Positions 470 through 38,040 of a stretch of 64,000 nt of DNA are shown here, piece by piece (position 1 is the stretch's first letter; each line of letters starts with the position of its first letter). This stretch comes from Pecten maximus (taxonomy: Eukaryota), in assembly GCF_902652985.1 (NCBI RefSeq), contig NC_047021.1:39494001-39558000 (forward strand), in the 5' to 3' direction. The notes under the pieces are model-generated. The model searched no databases. It saw only the letters and a list, made by a program, of their open reading frames with translations, and was not told where the DNA came from. The translations under genes were made by a program, and so were the position numbers.

Positions 470-2100
470 TTGTCAGGTCATACATGATCTAATACAAACA
501 AGTTTTCTGCAAACAAGAGGCCCATTATAAGTGCCCTCTAAAGTCATCACTTGCTCAATACATACAAGAGGCCCAAAAGGTCCTCTGAGGTCATTACTTA
601 CTTAAATACATACAAGAGACCCAAAAGGTCCTCTGAGGTTATCACTTACTCAAATACATACAAGAGGCCCAAAAGGTCCTCTGAGGTCATTACTTACTTA
701 AATACATACAAGAGACCCATAGGGCCCTTTCAAGTTATCACTTACTCAAATACATACAAGAGGCCCATAGGGCCCTTTCAAGTTATCACTTACTCAAATA
801 TAAACAAGAGGCCCAAAAGGTCCTCTGAGGTTATCACTTACTCAAATACAAACAAGAGGCCCAAAAGGTTCTCTGAGGTCATCACTTACTTAAATACATA
901 CAAGAGACCCATAGGGCCCTTTCAAGTTATCACTTACTCAAATACATACAAGAGGCCCATAGGGCCCTTTCAAGTTATCACTTACTCAAATATAAACAAG
1001 AGGCCCAAATGGTCCTCTGAGGTTATCACTTACTCAAATACAAACAAGAGGCCCAAAAGGTTCTCTGAGGTCATCACTTATTTAAATACATACAAGAGAC
1101 CCATAGGGCCCTTTCAAGTTATCACTTACTCAAATACATACAAGAGGCCAAACAGGTCCTCTGAGGTTATCACTTACTCAAATACAAACAAGAGGCCCAA
1201 AAGGTCCTCTGTGGTTATCACTTACTCAAATACAAACAAGAGGCCCAAAAGGTCCTCTGAGGTTATCACTTACTCAAATACATACAAGAGGCCAAACAGG
1301 TCCTCTGATGTTATCACTTACTCAAATACATACAAGAGGCCCAAAAGGTCCTCTGAGGTTATCACTTACTCAAATACATACAAGAGGCTCAAAAGGTCCT
1401 CTGAGGTTATCACTTACTCAAATACCAACAAGAGGCCCAAAAGGTCCTCTGAGGTCATCACTTACTGAAATACATACAAGAGGCCAAACAGGTCCTCTGA
1501 GGTCATCACTTTGTCAAATACATACAAGAGGCCCAAAAGGTCCTCTGAGGTCATCACTTTGTCAAATACATACAAGAGGCCCATAGGGCCCTTTCAAGTT
1601 ATTACTTAGTTTTAAGTACAGATAAGATGTCTGAAAGGTCCTTTGAGGTCACCATTTAATCAAATACAAACAAGAAGCCCATGGTGCTCCCCCAAGTCAT
1701 TGATTGATCTAATACAAACAAGAGGCCCATTGGGCCCTCTGACATCATCATTTAGCTTAATATAAATAAGATGACCTTAGGGCTCTCTGAATTCATCACA
1801 TAGTCAAATACAAACAAGCCCATGTGGCTTTCCCAAGTCATTACTTGGTCTTATTCAAACAAGAGGCATATGTGGACAATCTCAAAACATCACTAAGCCA
1901 AAGACAAACAGGCCTAAAAGGTCTTCTGAGGTCATCACTAAACAAAATAGGCCCATGGGGCCCTCTAAGTTCACATTTGGTCTAATATAAACCAAAGACC
2001 CAAAGAGTTCTCGCAGGTCTACATTTACAATTAAGAAGCCCATAGGGACTTGTAAGGTCATAACAAAGTCTAATAGAAACAAGATGCCCATAGGGACATG
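470..2100. repeat. 48-bp minisatellite (tcacttactcaaatacatacaagaggcccaaaaggtcctctgaggtta) with two unit variants and degenerate edges
   Basis: 16-aa periodicity of ORF 551-1468; units read directly in the sequence. Confidence 0.95.
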
Positions 2101-3444: not shown

Positions 3445-3820
3445 ATTTTTAACTTGCTTGGATGAGGTGTAGGGGAGCTATTGCTAAACTCCAGCGTCGG
3501 CAGCATCCGTAGATAATTAGGTTGAAGTTTTATAAAACAGTTTTGTGTCAATGCTAATGAGGATACAGATTAGGTATTTGACATGTTTTTTTTTTTCTTG
3601 TGACAAATCCTTTCTATTGGTAATTCATTTGTGGACCTGCAAACCTTGATTGTGACCTTTGACCTACTTTTGAAAATCTTTAACCTTTGCCACTATGTGT
3701 TAACTGTATGAGATATAGCTTTCATATTTGATGTGTCTTCCTTGTGACAAGACCTTTCCACTGGTGCTACATTTGCGGACCTGCAGACCTTGACCATGAC
3801 CTTTGACCTACTTTTAACAA
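3445..3820 (+). mobile_element. Degenerate Helentron/HINE-like non-autonomous element fragment with an internal ~140-bp duplication
   Basis: T-rich start, gagctattg...gcgtcggc head, and a duplicated ccttgtgacaa...ggacctgc...tgacctttgacctactttt unit. Confidence 0.55.
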
Positions 3821-4804: not shown

Positions 4805-6038
4805 GTACAATACATGTACCATGTAACATTATTTAACACAATGTATTGTACATTATACAATATGATATACATTGTATTATGCAATATATAAAACTATGTA
4901 TTGTACATTATACAATATGTAATACAGATGTACTTTGTATTACACAATATAAAATATGTAAATTATATCATTAGTATTTCAATATATGATAAATTATACT
5001 TTAAAGTATAAGGAAATATAATGAAAATATACAGCATGTATCATTTACTTTGTATACTTTTATTTGTATGATTTTACCATACAACAAATTGATTGAAATA
5101 TCATAAAAGTCCTCCAAATGTCTGAACAATCTTCAGCAGATCTTTTTCTGATCTCTTTATTGAACACATCCATACCTGCAGCTGTGTATGGGAGATAACT
5201 CTGAGAAGCCTCTAATGTAACTTTGGGATTTGATGTAAAGTTTGAAAATTGAAGCAACTGGCACTGAATTACCTTGACCTACTTTCATGACCACAGATGT
5301 CAAAAGTCTTAAACAACTTCTTCTCAATAGGCATATAAATCAAGTCGTTCGTTTGAATGACCTTGAAGTACGATTAAGGTATGCCAAAGGTTGAAATATT
5401 TATAGACATCGAGAAATTACTTAAAAGAAATACATGTAGTGTGAATTTCAGTTTCATGTCCATAACCTAAATTAACTTTGAAATAACATGAATTAAATTT
5501 TCATCAGCTACAGAACAAGTGAGTGATATATAATGTATTATGTACAGTACTGCTCAGGGTTATACAGGTATCCAAATGACAACAATACAACAATGAATTT
5601 AAGTCAAGCTTTAGTCCAAAGTGCAACAAATGCATATATCGTATAATTATACATAAACTGGTGCATGTATATCATGACATATGTAATATCATTAAAATGT
5701 TATTGACATACAATATTTTAGCCAATAACCCCAAATTGTGCATTTTTGTGATTTTCCATATCAGTGTTTTGGAAATGTTGAGTTTTTGACTGAAAAATCA
5801 TGTGAGTGCAGAGGTAAAATTGAAACCTTAATTAGATCATGCATTAAGCATGATTGAAGACATTTAATATAAAATCAGGTCAATTAGCTGTAGGGGTATG
5901 GATAGACTTAATATCAACTTTTTCTGTAAAATAAGAGACTCTCTTTTAATTACAGGGTTGAAATAAAAAAAAAATGTGTATTCAACTTGGTTACAAATTT
6001 ATTAGTATTAATTAGAAAAATCTTTTCCTTTTTTTAAG

Positions 6039-6086
6039 CTTAACTGTAGAATGTCGGTTCAGTCTGAGTTAATGAAGGTACCAAAG
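6039..6086 (+). CDS. Possible 16-aa micro-exon LNCRMSVQSELMKVPK of the FGD-like gene
   Basis: Strong pyrimidine tract tcttttcctttttttaAG, 48 nt open in phase 0-0, donor AAG|GTaatt. The AAG acceptor is suboptimal and there is no homology support. Confidence 0.3.
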
Positions 6087-6447
6087 GTAATTAAAGTACC
6101 TCACAATACCTGTACCCTCTGTCCTGGTGCATGCTCTACATATATATTGTATCCGTCTCTCAGCCCTGTTAAAATAAATCTAAATGGTTTCTAAATGGCA
6201 TGCGATAGGTCGGTAATCTTCCGCCTCTGTATCTAATGAAAAGTATAGACCTTCTGGGGGTGCGTTCCATTGGAAACTATATTCTCATTAATCTTTTATT
6301 ACACTTGGTTTTTATTTGTTACTAATTAATTTACAATCAAAGATGGTTACCTTGGCCTCTAATTGACAGACATTATTTCTCTTCTCAAGTCCTTAAGCTA
6401 CTATGCCAGTTCTAACCACTTAGCTACTAATATTCTTTATTAACAGT

Positions 6448-7468: not shown

Positions 7469-7597
7469 CTCCCAGAAATGGAGATAGGGAAATTGGCTCC
7501 AAAGTGGATAAAGGATGATGAGGTAACAATGTGTATGCAGTGTACCAACTCCTTCACAGCATTCCGTCGACGGCATCACTGCCGCGCCTGTGGCATT
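7469..7597 (+). CDS. FGD-like exon, FYVE domain first half: [43 protein letters not shown]
   Basis: tatttcAG|CTCCCA...GGCATT|GTaagt; WxxD and RRHHCRxCG FYVE signatures; closely resembles the FGD4/frabin segment LGKRAPRWIRDNEVTMCM. Confidence 0.97.
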
Positions 7598-7944
7598 GTA
7601 AGTTTCACCTATACAAGACATGTTGTGTGGTATATTTTATTTCAATATCAACTCATTGTAGAATCCTCATACTACAGCAAAACAATACTAATGACAGTTA
7701 TCATACACTGTATATAAAATACTGTTGCACTCTGACAATGCTAGTTTTTTTAGAACATGGCGTATTTCTTCTTAAATTACAAACAAAAAGTCTTCAAAAT
7801 GTGTCTTCAAGGACAGTGATAATAGTTGTGTGACCCCAGGTAGCCCATTGGTCACTGTATGACAATGGGTGCATTGACAGTTGTGTAATATATTGTATAT
7901 GTATGTAGTGTCTGCATTGCTGTAGAAATAGAGGAGAGTGTGAA

Positions 7945-8490
7945 GGCCCTATTGACATTTGACTTTACAGGTGGTTTGAAGTAACCATTGGCTCGTTGAC
8001 CTTTGACCTTACAGGTAGTTTGTAGTTAATTGTTGGTCCTATTTACCTTTGACCTTATAGGCAATTTGTAATATATTTTGGCATAATATTGACCATTAAC
8101 TTTACAGGTGATTTAATTGTAGTAAATACTAGTCCTATTGATCTTTAACCTTACAGGCGGTTTATTACAATTTTTGACCTAATTGACCTTCGACCTTACA
8201 GGTGGTTGATAGTAAAGTGTGGCCTAATTAACCCTTGACCTTACAGGTGGCGTGTAGTGACTATTGGCCCTATCGACCTTTGGCCTTACAGGTGGTTTGT
8301 ATTGTACTTGTTGGCAATATACCCTTAAATCTTTTACCTTATAGATGGTTTGTAGCAAAATTAATATATGCCCTACTGACCTTTGACCTTACTGGTGTGT
8401 TGTAAAAACTGTTGGTCTCAATAACCTTTGACCTTACTGGTGGTTTAACTGTTGACCCTATTGAACTTTAACCCTACAGGTGGTTTGTAG
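7945..8490 (+). repeat. ~45-bp degenerate tandem repeat made of the FYVE-exon 3' splice site and exon start (tgacctttgaccttacAG|GTGGTTTGTAGT), 12 units including the real acceptor
   Basis: Unit junctions end at 7970, 8014, 8060, 8107, 8156, 8201, 8246, 8291, 8344, 8394, 8439 and 8479. Confidence 0.9.
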
Positions 8491-8644
8491 TAAATGTTCC
8501 GGTAAGAAGGTGCCTCTGGCCTACGACAACTTCAGGTATAATCGTGTCTGTGACAAGTGTTATACAGTCTTAAAGAATGGAGTGGAGGAGGATGAAGTGC
8601 CGGAAAAACCAACCACCAGTTCAACTCGACGACGGGTGTTACAG
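8480..8644 (+). CDS. FGD-like exon, FYVE second half plus linker: VVCSKCSGKKVPLAYDNFRYNRVCDKCYTVLK...RRRVLQ
   Basis: ctacAG|GTGGTT...TTACAG|GTaacg; 165 nt, phase 0-0; VVCxxC and RVCxxC FYVE motifs. Confidence 0.96.
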
Positions 8645-9838: not shown

Positions 9839-11005
9839 ATACACAAACACCAGCAATATTCCGAAAAAAACATGTACATGACAGACATTTGAGTGAAAAA
9901 TAAAGAAAAAGCTTTTTAAATATGTCAGGATATTTTTCAGTCAGGAAAATTTTTCACATAACCTGGAACTTGCCTGCAGCCTTCCATATTATTGAGACAG
10001 ATAACCAATTATTACTCTAATTTTACACATAACTTACCACTAAAACTTCATTATAAATTAATTTTATTTCAAATGATAACTTATATTGTTCATAATTTCA
10101 AAAATCTTGACTTCTGTACTCAAGTAGAATTTGTCCTCACCCACAGGAATTATGACAATAAATTGAGTAAATAGGTCTTTATCATGTAAAAAAATCAAGT
10201 TAAAAAAAAAAGTTTAAAAAAAAAAGGGCGGTGGTGGGGTATTACCTTAAAAATATGTGATGCAAGGGAAATAACTGCAAAAGTTGCATTTACACTCGCA
10301 ACCATGATCAAGATGAAACAAATTTAACATCACATAAATAACGAGAAAAAAAGTATGTTCCTGATTTTTGTATTTGTTAAAATGAATTTCAAAAGATATT
10401 TTATGTGAATAAGATAAGGTTAATAAGGTTGTGAATCGTGCAATGAGTTATTGCTATATGAATAATATATAGTAATATATGTGATGCAAGGGAAGTAACT
10501 ACTGGAATACTGTATTCAATTTTTATAAAAATAAATAGATAAAATATATCATTTCACTTACATGTAACATTTTTATCATCAACAAAATCTTTTCAGAATG
10601 TGTATAATAATTATATATTGCAGATTATTTAATAAAATAAATATTATCATGTACTCTTTTGTCAAAATAAAAATTATTTCTACTGATTATGTTAATTTCT
10701 TTCCTGGCTGGCTTAAAATTTCCTTGTTATATTCATAAGCACTTTTTGACCTTTGGATTGTTGCGTAATTTTCGAGCGTCATCTGGATGCTTTTTATATT
10801 TCTCCTGTTGGATAACACAATGTTATCCCCCACATCAAAAAAAATTAGAGACTCCTGTGAACTATGAACTTACATGATAGTTAATGGAAGCCCTGTATCT
10901 TATCACAAGATGGATGCAGTAGAGCTAACTGTATCATAAAGCTACTTCCATCCTTCTAGGACACGTCAGAGAGGCAACTAAAATAGGTGGAAATAAATGT
11001 CAAAC

Positions 11006-11098
11006 CACAGGTGCCTGACTCGTTTTATAAAATATAAGTGTACATATAAATGAGACTCTTATATGTTATTATTTAATAAAATGAGTCGGGCACCTGTG
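11006..11098. mobile_element. 93-bp MITE with 23-bp TIRs (CACAGGTGCCYGACTCRTTTTAT) and a 7-bp TSD gtcaaac; P-superfamily-like termini
   Basis: TIRs match at 21/23 positions; gtcaaac at 10999-11005 and 11099-11105. Confidence 0.85.
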
Positions 11099-11290: not shown

Positions 11291-11411
11291 GTGGATGGAT
11301 GTCTTAGAACGAGTTGCCAGGCTTGAACTGCCAGAGTCGGAAGAAAATAAAAGAGCTTCAACTCAGTCCTCCAGTAGCAGTAGTGGAACTGCGGAAATTC
11401 AACAGTTATAG
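11291..11411 (+). CDS. FGD-like terminal coding exon: (K)WMDVLERVARLELPESEENKRASTQSSSSSSGTAEIQQL*
   Basis: ttgttccttctAG|GTGGATG completes the phase-2 codon; WM..L is the PH C-terminal helix; TAG at 11409-11411. Confidence 0.92.
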
Positions 11412-12198
11412 CAGTACTTCCTTGTTACATGGCGATAAGCCATAGACTTTGTAGTCCCCAACCCCGTTCCATTGGGGAAAATCCTACAGACATTTTCACA
11501 AGTTATTTCCTCTTCCATGGGGAAAAAGCCCACAGACTTTGTCAAAATTTGTCCTCTCTTCATGGGAAAAAAACAGTTCATTTAGCAAATTAATCTTGTA
11601 ATCAATGTTTTCCTGTGTGCATTGGATAACATGACTTTTAAAAAGACATGGTCTATTATTTTTTTAATCTCAAATGAAATTATAGGGATGTAATTTTCAG
11701 TGGAAGCACTGAATCTGTAGTAATTCGTATTAAACACCAATACAATATTTAAGGAGAACATTATTATACGCGTTGCCCTCAATGGCCTTCAAATCCAAAT
11801 AAATCCTTATAGCTGACCATTCCGTTAACAGTGTTTTATCAACACGCTCATTTTGTATGCTAGTAACAGGTGTATGTGACTGCATTGAAACTACAGTGTC
11901 TTGAAATTACTGCTTAAGTGTATTGCACTGTTGTCATTATATATAATTTATAAGGTGTATGTTGTGCTGTATAAAATACCGCGACATTGTAAGGTGTATT
12001 CTTTGATAATCAATGACTTGGTGCAGTGTAAGTTCAGTATTGTGATGTATGAATGCGGTGTGTAAGTGGTTTATGTGACAATGAACATGGAAAGCATGTG
12101 CTGCATCTTTAAAGTTTCATTTGGAAAATACATTTAATGTGTCTTTACTTAATATTTGTGTTTAGTTATGTAAACAATCAGATTTCTTCAGGCCTATT

Positions 12199-12251
12199 CG
12201 GGGCCGCAGTGGCCGAGTGGTTAAGTTGTCCCGGCTGTTGCCAGGTACTGG
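12199..12251 (+). mobile_element. Internally deleted fragment of V-SINE family 1
   Basis: gggccgcagtggccgagtggttaag...gttgccaggtactg matches the head and a later segment of the 42816 and 43178 copies. Confidence 0.6.
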
Positions 12252-13414
12252 GTCAGTGGGGAGTAGAATGGGCAATTTTTTTTCATGCTTTATTCATGTG
12301 TGTTTCTGCCTCCATAAACTTGGGATGTACAATATGCATCATAAACATCAGCATAGTATAATTTTTTTTTTTTTTTAAACTGAACAAAAATTGAACAAAT
12401 ACAAAAATGAAGACAGTAAAATGTGTCAAATGCTTTTCCTCTACAACAGTTACTATTTTGCTGGTCCATTATAAAGGTATCAACAGATATATTTTTTCAG
12501 AAATCCATTTCAGTGCCTGGTCAGTAACCCACGGCCTCTGTTCATGAATATTTAGTTGGTTAAAAGAGACCTCAACAAGTAGTCTGAAGAATCACTAGGT
12601 TATCCAGTAAATTTCTACAGCTTATCCAGAAAACAAACAAAAAAAACAAAAAAAAAACAAAAAAAAACAAATTCTGAGTGTGAGTGACCTCCCTTTAACT
12701 AGTATGAAAGCAGGGATGTTTTGGGACAGTGTTTACTTTAAATGTGGCTGTTCATACACTGCATACTGGCTTTTGTAAATGTGTCCCAAACATCATTGCA
12801 TAGATGTTACAAATGTTTTCATATGTTTCATAAACATACTGATTTCTGCTTAAATATTTCAGTCCTAGCTTTCATGCAACTTCTCGATGAGAGTATTTTT
12901 TAGCAATAATTTATTTTGTGTATTTGTGAATACCTATTTTGTATATATATGTATTGTTATTTATGTTTAGCAGGATTTGTACAATTTCAATCAATGTGTG
13001 TACTTAAATATTAAATTATTTTCACTGCAATTATACCATGATAAAACTGATTAAGTTGTCATTGAAATAGTTACTTGAAAGTTTTTGTCAAACTGACCTA
13101 TGATATGTCGCTTCATCTTAGCTGTTTGATATTTAAATCCATTAAACTTTTTCTGCTATACAAAAGCCATTCTGGATTTTACAAAATTTTACAGAATTAT
13201 ATACATAGATACATGGGTACAGGTATGAATTGCTATTTTCTATGTAGATTAAAAATACAAGATGGCCACCGCTGTCTGTCACTGGACAAAACAATTCCAT
13301 GTAGATCATAAATGTATATGAAAACTGTATTTATATATAATATAGAATAAAGTTTAAAGTGTCCATGTGACGGTAGATAATTATAGAATAAAAAGTCAAA
13401 CACAGATCTGCTGT

Positions 13415-13456
13415 CTCCCTAGTACTTTCGCGGCTACATCGTGCCGCTCTTCAGGG
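13415..13456 (-). ncRNA. Minimal type I hammerhead ribozyme motif (intact core, stem I truncated to 2 bp)
   Basis: CC-CUGAAGA-GCGGC[ACGAUGUA]GCCGC-GAAA-GUAC-UA^GGGAG: full core, perfect 5-bp stem II, palindromic GUAC loop III. Confidence 0.8.
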
Positions 13457-13474
13457 TGCCGAATAAAATTCACA

Positions 13475-13519
13475 TTCCCCTGAAGAGCAGCACGATGTAG
13501 CCGCAAAAGTACTTGGGAG
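13475..13519 (+). ncRNA. Mutated minimal hammerhead motif (full stem I, G12A core mutation)
   Basis: UUCCC-CUGAAGA-GCAGC[ACGAUGUA]GCCGC-AAAA-GUAC-UU-GGGAG; stem I is UUCCC/GGGAG. Confidence 0.65.
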
Positions 13520-14404
13520 ACAGCAGATCTGTGTTTGACTTTTTATTCTATCAATATTTACCGTCACATGGACACTTTAAACTTCATTCTATAGCAATAT
13601 GATGTTAAATGGACCAACACATTATGATCAATGGAGCTAGATTGGAAGTTTTAACAAGTCAAATTTCAACCATATGCCAGAATTCAAATGTCTTAAACAA
13701 GTAGTTTGTGAAGTTTGCTTCAAACATTATACAATTATGCTTCCAGGAAACTTCCATGTTTGAACTCATCATTACAGTTTTCAGGATGGTGCTGAAATCC
13801 TCATTAATAGGGCTAACCATTCACAGCCTCGTTTTGATACTGGTATACCATTTCTAGATTTATATGTTTTTACTCGCCAGTAAATCAGTTTTTATAACAA
13901 ATATATGTTTGGTTTACTTTGTAATGTAATTATAAGGTAAATATGGGAAATTATCAGTGATTTTTTTTTTTTGTGATTTAGTTTTCATTATAAAACATGT
14001 TACCCTTTTCTGTGATCATTGTGAAATATAGACCATTTTAAAGGATTTTTAAAGTGAGTTTGTAATGTACGTAGCTTATTACATTTTATATGAACAATCT
14101 CTTTCAAGTTTTTCCATTGTGTATGACATCATGGAATGGGAAGAAATTTGAGGAATTCTTTTATCAAATACATGACTTGATTATTTTAATGGATACATTA
14201 TGTCAAAAGTTAAACCAGAAAATACACACTTAATTTTACTTGTGTTATAAAATATTGATGTCTAAAATTATCCAATTCATAATAGATCACTTTAGGTAAT
14301 GTTTAAGTTAAGAAAAACTCGGTGAAAATTTCATATGGTCAGAAATGATCTATCGCTTTCACCATTGCAGTGATTTTTATTATGATGTTACTCTTGATTT
14401 ATGA

Positions 14405-14627
14405 ACTTTATTTATTTTACAACAATTGTAAGTTTTATCAACTTCTGTTAATCATTCTTGTGGGCCCAGATGGTGGTACACAGACATAGGGGTAATCATT
14501 ATGAGACTAAACCAAAGTACAAGTAGAAAACATGGGAGATGATGACTCATACATTTTCACCTCCCATCAAGGAATCAAACCCCGGCTGTCTTGTTGAAAG
14601 ATGAGAGTGCTATCCACTATGCCACCT
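14405..14627 (-). mobile_element. Old V-SINE family 2 copy
   Basis: The reverse complement shows ggtggcatagtggatagcac...gggtttgattcc head and ...tctgggcccacaagaatgattaacagaagttgataaaactt...aataaa tail. Confidence 0.6.
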
Positions 14628-37888: not shown

Positions 37889-38040
37889 TATACATAGTAA
37901 TAATAATAAAAAACACAAACCAGAAATTCACACTAGCGCTCTCAACATGCTTTGAGAGCAAGCTCTTCAGGTGTAATGAAGAGCTTGCTCTCAAAGCATG
38001 TTGAAAGCGCTAGTGTGAATTATTATTATTACTATATATA
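37889..38040. mobile_element. Foldback element (45-bp arms 37925-37969 / 37977-38021, 7-nt loop, outer AAT-rich arms) carrying degenerate minimal hammerhead motifs; Penelope-like remnant
   Basis: Arms match at 44/45. Minus strand: UUACAC-CUGAAGA-...-GAGA-GCGC-UA-GUGUGA. Plus strand: UGAAGA-...-GAAA-GCGC-UA-GUGUGA. Confidence 0.7.

What the first reader, a model, noticed from the sequence alone, without database searches (positions are those of the whole stretch)
13341..13593. Foldback element carrying a head-to-head pair of minimal hammerhead ribozymes, downstream of the FGD-like stop codon
Seen: two 116-bp inverted arms around a 21-nt spacer. The minus-strand arm reads CC-CUGAAGA-GCGGC[ACGAUGUA]GCCGC-GAAA-GUAC-UA^GGGAG. 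This is a complete hammerhead core with a perfect stem II and a palindromic 4-nt loop III, but only 2 bp of stem I. The plus-strand arm keeps a 5-bp stem I (UUCCC/GGGAG) but has G12A and a stem II mismatch, so the two arms together reconstruct an intact ancestor. Known: minimal type I hammerheads with palindromic loop III are the signature of Penelope-like element pLTRs, are thought to cleave as dimers, and Penelope insertions often leave inverted pLTRs. Inference: this is a PLE-derived non-autonomous unit. If the FGD 3' UTR extends past it, the mRNA carries a ~116-bp dsRNA stem (ADAR or Dicer substrate) in which the sense ribozyme is the inactivated copy.
Basis: partly seen in the sequence, partly recalled or inferred. 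Interest (0 to 1): 0.85.

Follow-up and report, generated by a model that had tools for sequence, protein, structure and literature searches.

The report
Inverted Penelope retrotransposon tails with hammerheads
The foldback is real, but it is two broken-off tail ends of a Penelope-like retrotransposon inserted head-to-head, each carrying that family's small hammerhead ribozyme; this is ordinary, already described transposon biology, and neither ribozyme copy looks able to cut here.

Summary
Arms 13341-13456 and 13478-13593 are 94% complementary. The minus arm carries a full minimal type I hammerhead core, predicted cut 13420|13419, but only 2 bp of stem I. The plus arm has G12A and a stem II mismatch.

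It is a dead insertion product of a canonical Penelope-like element (PLE). Elsewhere in this 918-Mb genome the same 116-137 nt end a roughly 0.7-kb pseudo-LTR. [quoted passage not shown] The 21-nt "spacer" is upstream pLTR sequence kept by the right-hand copy.

Foldbacks are this family's commonest insertion form, about 13 of 28 sampled loci. Each has its own junction, so they arise anew and are not a mobile unit. Both outer ends abut (TA)n. Seventeen of 18 other foldbacks have the PLE "tail" on one arm only; this one has two.

The site lies 1.9 kb downstream of the stop codon of a FYVE-PH (FGD-like) gene. RNA contigs cover both sides of the foldback, but none crosses it. In a transcript holding both arms, a hairpin of -187 kcal/mol would outcompete either ribozyme fold.

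All of this matches published PLE features. The scan already found a solo copy of the same kind in this genome (s1-785269). Interest is low.

The parts
13341..13456 (-). Left copy: the last 116 nt of the PLE unit (hammerhead plus post-cleavage segment plus 'tail'), inverted, with its element 3' end at 13341 next to TA-rich flank
   Evidence: (93-97% identity to single genomic copies)
13415..13456 (-). Minimal type I hammerhead motif with an intact core (CUGAAGA, 5-bp stem II, GAAA, palindrome AGUACU, A17). Stem I is cut down to 2 bp by the 5' truncation. Predicted cut 13420|13419
   Evidence: sequence; only descriptor hit in the window, 0.02 expected; monomer fold -14.5 kcal/mol, not better than shuffles
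13457..13593 (+). Right copy: the last 137 nt of the PLE unit in sense orientation on the + strand, with its element 3' end at 13593.
   Evidence: query 116-253 matches single copies at 88-93%
13475..13519 (+). Degenerate hammerhead copy: 5-bp stem I kept, G12 changed to A (13505), A-C mismatch in stem II (13489/13502), position 17 is U
   Evidence: fails the descriptor; fold -6.9 kcal/mol, worse than the shuffle mean
13341..13380 (-). 'Tail' extension of the left copy, about 35-40 nt beyond the short-form end. The usual family pattern has a tail on one arm only
   Evidence: tail concept from PMC8557442 and PMC11167929
13554..13593 (+). 'Tail' extension of the right copy. Having both tails makes this locus the exception among 19 foldbacks
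11291..13355 (+). Host context: terminal exon of a FYVE-PH (FGD-like) gene. Splice acceptor at 11291, stop codon 11409-11411, RNA contigs continuous to at least 13355
   Evidence: GT..AG joints 9060>9409 and 9569>11291 in 4 studies; contig pieces; frames; PH and FYVE exons

Best explanation
The element is a dead-on-arrival insertion of a canonical, endonuclease-bearing Penelope-like retrotransposon (PLE). It consists of two 5'-truncated copies of the element's 3' end, joined head-to-head at a TA-rich site with both element 3' ends facing outward. Each copy holds the hammerhead, about 40 nt after the cut site, and a tail of about 35 nt.

Shown here:
- The arms are the terminal part of a roughly 0.7-kb pseudo-LTR of a 3.86-kb unit that encodes RT plus a C-terminal GIY-YIG nuclease.
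- The hammerhead is in sense to that ORF.
- The family has hundreds of copies.
- Foldbacks form independently at many loci.
- Their two arms always carry the same subfamily variant.

Inferred mechanism. PLE target-primed reverse transcription starts at an internal site just downstream of the hammerhead (published for an Anolis PLE) and copies back towards the RNA 5' region. The inverted second arm then arises in one of two ways: priming from the second cleaved target strand, or the cDNA folding back on itself.

At this locus the ribozymes do nothing. The sense copy is mutated, the antisense copy lacks stem I, there is no same-strand partner for the dimer these minimal motifs need, and in any RNA holding both arms they pair with each other. 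If the host 3' UTR runs through it, the only likely effect is a long dsRNA stem.
For: Identity as a PLE:
- The arm is multi-copy: at least 84 scored matches. The 23-nt segment after the cut site has 373 matches at up to 2 mismatches, against 1 for the reversed control.
- In L027, direct repeats with 3858-nt spacing end exactly with the arm sequence.
[quoted passage not shown] Its 741-aa, 98%-identical relative and 729 homologues, the named ones mostly from bivalves, carry precomputed RVT_1/GIY-YIG Pfam domains in most rows.

Hammerhead in the family:
- Among 28 unbiased copies that span the motif, core positions are 85-100% (mostly 96-100%) in the majority state and 13 copies are fully intact.
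- A second, diverged PLE family in the same window keeps CUGAAGA, GAAA and U-A. It changes stem I (UCCC/GGGA to UUACAC/GUGUGA), stem II, and the helix III palindrome (AGUACU to AGCGCU).

Insertion signatures:
- Every foldback has a different junction.
- Arms share the loop II variant in 16 of 18 loci and differ by 1 nt in the other two. Exactly one arm has a tail in 17 of 18.
- Outer ends abut (TA)n.

Literature:
- Minimal hammerheads in PLE pLTRs, with pairs on opposite strands 100-700 bp apart (PMC4209133).
- An inverted 5'-truncated copy and a one-sided 30-40-bp tail are typical of PLEs (PMC8557442).
- A PLE protein cleaves and extends both target strands and initiates reverse transcription internally at two sites that define the tail (PMC11167929).
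Against: - Pfam scores for RVT_1 and GIY-YIG fall just below the curated cut-offs (25.8 against 29.6 bits; 20.7 against 22.6 bits).
- I did not place the RT in a PLE phylogeny. The clade call (Neptune/Nematis-like, from a CX4CxxC linker and CCHH read by eye) is weak.
- No Rfam hammerhead model matches, even on intact copies.
- No cleavage data exist for this family.
- This locus has two tails, unlike the other 18 foldbacks. The integration models do not explain that.
- No read or contig spans the centre of the foldback.
Confidence: 0.85

Rival explanations
1. The foldback is itself a non-autonomous mobile unit (MITE-like or retrozyme-like) that is copied as a whole by the PLE machinery.
For: About half of the sampled loci of this family are foldbacks. 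For the second family in the window, four other loci match the arm end, junction and adjoining arm (query 1-62) at 98-100%.
Against: In family 1, all 18 other foldbacks have different inner junctions, inner sequence of 0 to about 60 nt, and different arm lengths. That is the signature of independent events. A hairpin RNA of -187 kcal/mol would be a poor template. No foldback elsewhere shares this locus's junction.
Confidence: 0.04
2. The insertion has been co-opted by the host. As part of the FGD-like 3' UTR, its 116-bp dsRNA stem is edited by ADAR or diced, or its AAUAAA hexamers set an alternative poly(A) site, and this regulates the gene.
For: - RNA contigs from four studies cover the terminal exon up to 13355 and resume at 13518.
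- The hairpin is very stable.
- The + strand carries AATAAA at about 13347, 13389 and 13463.
- One low-depth flank-anchored contig shows two adjacent A>G at 13553-13554.
Against: - No contig crosses the repeat.
- Strand and poly(A) site are unknown.
- In run X7, depth is 0 over 12249-13233 but 52 beyond 13533. The downstream cover may therefore be another transcript.
- The A>G calls lie in a multi-copy repeat, come from one contig at depth 5, and lack matched DNA.
- There is no conservation test, because no relatives are available.
- The arms are decaying at random (7 mismatches).
Confidence: 0.08
3. The inverted duplication is an assembly artefact of a single PLE tail.
For: PMC8557442 notes that PLE tandem and inverted structures cause assembly problems. 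No RNA contig spans the centre.
Against: Contigs from independent studies anchor both arm-flank junctions: 12233-13355 on the left, 13518-13645 and 13533-14429 on the right. The arms differ at 7 positions and by 21 nt in length. The same architecture recurs at 18 or more other loci.
Confidence: 0.03

Closest known systems
Minimal hammerhead ribozymes in the pseudo-LTRs of Penelope-like elements (Cervera and de la Pena 2014, PMC4209133)
   Same: Type I topology, with a CUGANGA / GAAA / U-H core and a G10.1-C11.1 pair. Stem I is short (4-5 bp), and helix III is tiny and palindromic, implying action as a dimer. The motif sits in the pLTR in sense to the RT-EN ORF. Most genomic motifs are solo remnants of truncated PLEs, and some lie as pairs on opposite strands 100-700 bp apart.
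   Different: [quoted passage not shown] Here the opposite-strand pair is much tighter (hammerhead starts 26 nt apart). In this family the tight foldback is the commonest insertion form.
PLE insertion architecture: inverted 5'-truncated copy, one-sided 30-40-bp tail, microsatellite targets (Craig et al. 2021, PMC8557442); two-strand cleavage and extension with internal RT initiation (Frangieh et al. 2024, PMC11167929)
   Same: Head-to-head truncated copies and a (TA)n target. There are two alternative element ends about 35-50 nt apart (short form and tailed form), located about 40 and 75 nt downstream of the hammerhead cut site.
   Different: The published figure shows the inverted copy next to a full element. 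Here both copies are cut down to the hammerhead-plus-tail segment. This locus carries a tail on both arms.
Metazoan non-LTR retrozymes (Cervera and de la Pena 2020, PMC7229834; Li et al. 2026 preprint, 10.64898/2026.07.22.740005)
   Same: Short non-coding hammerhead-bearing repeats related to PLE pLTRs. When such repeats overlap exons, they tend to lie in 3' UTRs.
   Different: Retrozymes are direct tandem repeats of 170-400 nt that yield circular RNAs. This locus is an inverted pair with no tandem partner, so unit-length excision and circularisation are not possible.
Inverted-repeat TE pairs in 3' UTRs as dsRNA/ADAR substrates (for example inverted Alu pairs in human; from general knowledge)
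   Same: Two copies of a retroelement in opposite orientation, probably inside a 3' UTR, predicted to form a long intramolecular duplex.
   Different: No editing, dicing or regulatory effect is shown here. The two arms come from one insertion event rather than two.

Membership tests
Penelope-like element (canonical, EN+) | Single ORF with reverse transcriptase followed by a C-terminal GIY-YIG endonuclease | tested here: met
   L033 4772-6607(-): RVT_1 at residues 150-283 and GIY-YIG at 517-569. The same holds in the 741-aa relative P0001. 729 homologues were found, and most of the 120 listed carry precomputed RVT_1 and/or GIY-YIG domains. Scores are just under Pfam's curated cut-offs.
Penelope-like element (canonical, EN+) | Pseudo-LTRs: direct terminal repeats arising from partial tandem copies | tested here: met
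   L027 direct repeats 1737-2354 and 5595-6211, spacing 3858 nt. The same repeat is shared with L030, L033 and L034.
Penelope-like element (canonical, EN+) | Frequent 5' truncation, an adjacent inverted truncated copy, and an optional 30-40-bp tail at one end | tested here: met
   In an unbiased sample of 35 copies, 27 have 5' ends within about 45 nt upstream of the cut site (25 of them at or just inside the hammerhead's 5' edge). About 13 of 28 loci have an inverted partner. A tail on exactly one arm occurs in 17 of 18 other foldbacks. The window copy itself has two tails.
Penelope-like element (canonical, EN+) | RT groups with PLE/TERT reverse transcriptases in a phylogeny | not tested
   No reference PLE or TERT sequences were at hand. 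PDB phmmer gave nothing significant.
Minimal type I hammerhead (PLE type) | Catalytic core C3-U-G-A-N-G-A9, G12-A-A14, A15.1/U16.1, H17 | tested here: met
   Met in the minus arm and in the family majority. Not met in the plus arm, where G12 is A at 13505.
Minimal type I hammerhead (PLE type) | Stem II closed by G10.1-C11.1, and a palindromic helix III/loop 3 allowing a dimer | tested here: met
   GCGGC/GCCGC and AGUACU. In the second family the palindrome changes to AGCGCU while staying a palindrome.
Minimal type I hammerhead (PLE type) | Stem I of about 4-6 bp flanking the core and the cut site | tested here: not met
   The minus arm has only 2 bp, because the copy is truncated at that point. 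The plus arm has 5 bp but a dead core. Untruncated family copies have 4 bp. No complete motif exists at this locus.
Minimal type I hammerhead (PLE type) | Self-cleavage | not testable with these tools
   Published PLE minimal hammerheads cleave poorly in vitro, need dimers, or are protein-assisted (PMC4209133, PMC11167929).
Rfam hammerhead families (type I, II, III, HH9, HH10) | Match to the covariance model | tested here: not met
   No hammerhead hit at E up to 10 on the window arms, nor on an intact copy in L027. These models expect a helix III hairpin, so the miss says little about minimal motifs.
Non-LTR retrozyme | Direct tandem repeats, each with a hammerhead, giving unit-length circular RNA | tested here: not met
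   There are no direct repeats in 12800-14200, and the two motifs lie on opposite strands.
microRNA precursors (mir-4796, mir-345 and others) | Score at or above Rfam's gathering threshold | tested here: not met
   Best score 47.7 bits against a threshold of 90. These are generic long-hairpin matches.

The most novel reading that the evidence does not exclude
The hammerhead-plus-tail segment may be the 5' leader of the PLE transcript.

- In an unbiased sample, 5' ends of short copies cluster 0-8 nt upstream of C3.
- That cluster lies 26 nt downstream of a TAAAAT box and two TGACGTCA sites.
- On this reading, the thousands of solo 'minimal hammerheads' scattered through animal genomes would be full-length cDNAs of that leader. 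They would be made when the PLE enzyme starts reverse transcription at the promoter-proximal internal site.
- The tight foldbacks have same-template arms and exactly one tail. They would then record how the second arm is made, either by cDNA snap-back or by priming from the second target strand.

If true, this would turn genomic foldbacks into a readout of the unknown late steps of PLE integration.
Probability: 0.2. Interest if true: 0.5.

Novelty: new member of a known kind. Interest (0 to 1): 0.2.

Why it matters
It matters little as a discovery. Minimal hammerheads in PLE pseudo-LTRs, inverted truncated PLE copies, one-sided tails and TA-microsatellite targeting are all published.

The result is useful in three ways:
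- Annotation. This hairpin, and the many like it in this genome, should be masked as PLE debris. They should not be called ribozyme genes or miRNA precursors. Rfam hammerhead models miss them, while miRNA models give weak false hits.
- Mechanism. The family-level regularities could help people working on PLE integration: 5' ends at the hammerhead edge, same-template arms, and exactly one tail per foldback.
- Host gene. If the FGD-like 3' UTR does read through, the locus is a ready example of a TE-made dsRNA stem in a mollusc mRNA.

Tried and rejected
- Rfam cmscan with permissive thresholds on 2 kb, on 136 nt, and on an intact family copy gave no hammerhead hit. It returned only sub-threshold miRNA hairpin matches, which I reject as generic hairpin scores.
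- PDB sequence search with the PLE ORF gave nothing.
They show splicing and cover on both sides of the foldback. They cannot show strand, poly(A) site, read-through of the repeat, ribozyme ends or reliable editing. The A>G differences at 13553-13554 and T>C at 13423 lie in multi-copy sequence, so I do not count them as editing.
- I looked for covariation inside family 1 and found none. Stem II changes in dead copies are uncompensated, as expected for neutral decay. Covariation appears only between families.
I used copies already held.
- Cofolding two intact motifs did not recover the textbook dimer. The 6-bp helix III duplex is worth only -4.8 kcal/mol, so this gave no support either way.
- Organism: the genome size and contig count and the bivalve homologues suggest a scallop. 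That is my recollection plus inference, not a tool result.
- The joined spliced coding sequence of the host gene was not built or searched. Exons were translated and scanned one by one.
Full report
**1. The observation**

The repeat finder reports arms 13341-13456 and 13478-13593, 116 nt each, 94% complementary, 21 nt apart. As RNA the 253 nt fold into a single hairpin of -186.9 kcal/mol, z = -30 against shuffles.

Read directly, the minus strand runs as follows:
- CC, then CUGAAGA (13454-13448)
- a perfect 5-bp stem II with an 8-nt loop
- GAAA, then GUAC, then U-A

The plus-strand arm keeps a 5-bp stem I (13475-13479 with 13515-13519). It has A for G12 at 13505 and an A-C mismatch in stem II.

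I wrote a minimal-hammerhead descriptor requiring the core, a stem II of at least 4 bp, a palindromic helix III and U-H. It finds exactly one site in the whole window on both strands, the minus arm, against 0.02 expected per shuffled window. Neither arm is a complete ribozyme: one lacks stem I and the other lacks G12.

No Rfam hammerhead model matches at E up to 10, either here or on an intact family copy. Those models expect a helix III hairpin, so the miss is uninformative. The weak miRNA matches (at most 47.7 bits against thresholds of 63-114) are generic hairpin scores.

**2. What it is**

The window sits at C7:39494001-39558000 of a 918-Mb, 3983-contig genome. The arm is a repeat:
- at least 84 scored matches to the foldback
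- 373 matches at up to 2 mismatches to the 23 nt that follow the cut site, against 1 for the reversed control

Single copies show where the arm belongs. In L027, two direct repeats 3858 nt apart each end with the arm sequence. The stretch between them is 96.7% identical to L033. [quoted passage not shown]

A 741-aa protein 98% identical to that ORF, and 729 homologues, were found. The named ones come mostly from bivalves (mussels, oysters, pearl oyster). Most listed rows carry precomputed RVT_1 and/or GIY-YIG domains.

RT plus a C-terminal GIY-YIG nuclease, flanked by pseudo-LTRs, is the definition of a canonical EN+ Penelope-like element. The hammerhead lies in sense to the ORF, about 420 nt past its stop, near the very end of the unit. 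By eye the linker has CX4CxxC and the nuclease has the CCHH motif. That pattern points to Neptune/Nematis-like rather than Hydra as described in PMC8557442, but I did not run a phylogeny.

The locus is therefore a 137-nt sense copy (13457-13593) abutting a 116-nt inverted copy (13341-13456). Both are 5'-truncated, and both have their element 3' ends facing outward into TA-rich flank.

**3. The hammerhead in the family**

I seeded on the segment after the cut site, so the sample is not conditioned on the ribozyme. This gave 35 copies from 30 loci.
- Twenty-eight copies span the motif without indels.
- Core positions are 85-100% (mostly 96-100%) in the majority state, and 13 copies are fully intact.
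- Changes in individual copies are not compensated, as expected for dead copies.

Covariation appears between families. The second foldback in this window (37889-38040) belongs to a related but diverged PLE lineage. Its copies keep CUGAAGA, GAAA and U-A. They change three helices:
- stem I, from UCCC/GGGA to UUACAC/GUGUGA
- all of stem II
- the helix III palindrome, from AGUACU to AGCGCU

Its tail still shares a recognisable block with family 1. This is the pattern Cervera and de la Pena reported for PLE minimal hammerheads (PMC4209133).

**4. How the foldback arose**

Fifteen other foldback loci found with the whole element, plus three more from the unbiased sample or the single-copy loci, all have different inner junctions and inner sequences. 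Foldbacks are therefore produced anew at insertion and are not copied as units.

By eye in the unbiased sample, the 28 distinct loci break down roughly as:
- about 13 with an inverted partner of some length
- 7 short solo copies, 6 of them flanked by TA-rich sequence on both sides
- 8 longer or full copies

Three regularities stand out:
- The 5' ends of 25 of 35 copies fall at unit positions 3732-3747, which is 0-8 nt upstream of C3 or just inside the core.
- The two arms carry the same loop II subfamily variant in 16 of 18 loci and differ by one base in the other two. Both arms therefore come from one template or one source.
- Exactly one arm carries the roughly 35-nt tail in 17 of 18 loci (L018's tail has an indel and was scored by eye). 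The window copy is the only one with two tails.

All outer ends abut (TA)n.

These features match published PLE biology:
- an adjacent inverted 5'-truncated copy, a 30-40-bp tail often at one end only, and microsatellite targets (PMC8557442)
- a purified PLE protein that cleaves and extends both target strands and initiates reverse transcription at two internal sites whose spacing is the tail, just downstream of the hammerhead (PMC11167929)
- hammerhead pairs on opposite strands (PMC4209133)

My inference is that the second arm is made in one of two ways: priming from the second target strand, or snap-back of the cDNA. The data here do not separate the two.

The sharp 5' boundary has two candidate causes. 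One is an RNA 5' end there: two TGACGTCA sites and a TAAAAT box lie 26-50 nt upstream. The other is microhomology joining between the TA-like patch just upstream of stem I and the (TA)n target. Some copies, including the right arm here, extend 15-25 nt further upstream, which argues against a strict transcription start.

**5. What it does at this locus**

Spliced RNA contigs from four studies give GT..AG joints 9060>9409 and 9569>11291. Exon-by-exon translation gives PH-domain exons. In the terminal exon the reading frame stops at 11409-11411. FYVE-like exons lie at about 7478-7600 and 8480-8580. 'FGD-like' is therefore reasonable for the C-terminal FYVE-PH part. I did not check a DH domain, and I did not build the joined model.

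The foldback starts 1930 nt past the stop. Contigs run on to 13282-13355 and resume at 13518-13564, continuing beyond 14800 with rising depth. Both arm-flank junctions are thus present in RNA-derived contigs of several studies, and no empty-site joint was seen.

No contig crosses the repeat, contigs carry no strand, and run X7 has no cover over 12249-13233. Read-through by the FGD-like mRNA is likely but unproven.

If both arms are in one RNA, the hairpin (-187 kcal/mol) dwarfs either hammerhead fold (-14.5 and -6.9 kcal/mol, neither better than shuffles). The sense copy is also catalytically dead. Minimal PLE hammerheads need a same-strand partner to build helix III, and none exists here. I conclude the ribozymes are inert at this site. 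The only plausible host effect is a long dsRNA stem, or use of the AAUAAA hexamers the left arm brings to the + strand.

**6. Comparison, novelty and verdict**

The locus works like, and is a member of, the known class 'truncated PLE insertion with a minimal hammerhead'. It fails the retrozyme definition because it has no direct tandem repeat. It also fails Rfam's hammerhead and miRNA thresholds.

An earlier follow-up in this scan reached the same reading for a solo 132-bp copy elsewhere in this genome (s1-785269). I reached mine from my own searches.

The specific family is probably undescribed, so I class it as a new member of a known kind. The family-level regularities are modestly interesting for PLE mechanism but largely anticipated in the literature. 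Interest 0.2.

Noticed in passing
window 37889-38040: The second hammerhead foldback is not unrelated. It belongs to a diverged PLE lineage with the same layout: hammerhead, short end, tail, (TA)n. In its copies the stems and the palindrome covary with family 1. At this locus the minus copy has GAGA for GAAA and the plus copy lacks C3. Three of three foldbacks examined have one tail.
   Followed up: partly
G000:C1451:27175-27877 and G000:C5:43497894-43498598 (not fetched): The family 2 hammerhead core (45 nt, 100% identical in more than 35 places) also occurs in direct tandem arrays with a 165-nt period. This is a retrozyme-like arrangement that could give small circular RNAs.
   Followed up: no
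G000:C9:43372641, C11:3827774, C7:43520950, C9:25337058: Four other loci match the family 2 arm end, 7-nt junction and adjoining arm (query 1-62) at 98-100%. Unlike family 1, that particular foldback may have been copied as part of a larger repeat.
   Followed up: no
L023 / L048 (G000:C1:51254210-51254570): A family 2 foldback sits directly next to a family 1 foldback in the same (TA)n tract. TA microsatellites look like shared hot spots for both PLE lineages.
   Followed up: partly
L027 unit positions 3686-3715 (L027:6086-6115): Two perfect TGACGTCA (CRE-like) palindromes and a TAAAAT box lie 26-50 nt upstream of the point where most short copies begin. This may be the pLTR core promoter.
   Followed up: partly
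L028:231-2336 and L036:1762-2095: A tandem repeat with a period of about 145 nt, shared at 72-75% identity between two chromosomes. It was not identified.
   Followed up: no
window 551-1586 (+): A long open frame made of tandem units of about 13 aa (YKRPKRSSEVITY-like). It may be a coding-looking minisatellite or a repeat protein exon.
   Followed up: no
window 12052-12248 and 10870-11066: Very high summed contig depth in all RNA runs (up to 2069 in X1), with contig breaks at 12197-12233 and 11002. These are other high-copy repeats, the first inside the presumed 3' UTR and the second in the last intron.
   Followed up: no
window 13594-13595, 13563, 13287-13307: Polymorphisms between the reference and the RNA-run individuals right at the insertion. 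The two bases after the right arm are absent in contigs of all four runs (the only allele seen in X1 and X7). G>A at 13563 appears in three runs. A cluster of differences lies at 13287-13307.
   Followed up: no
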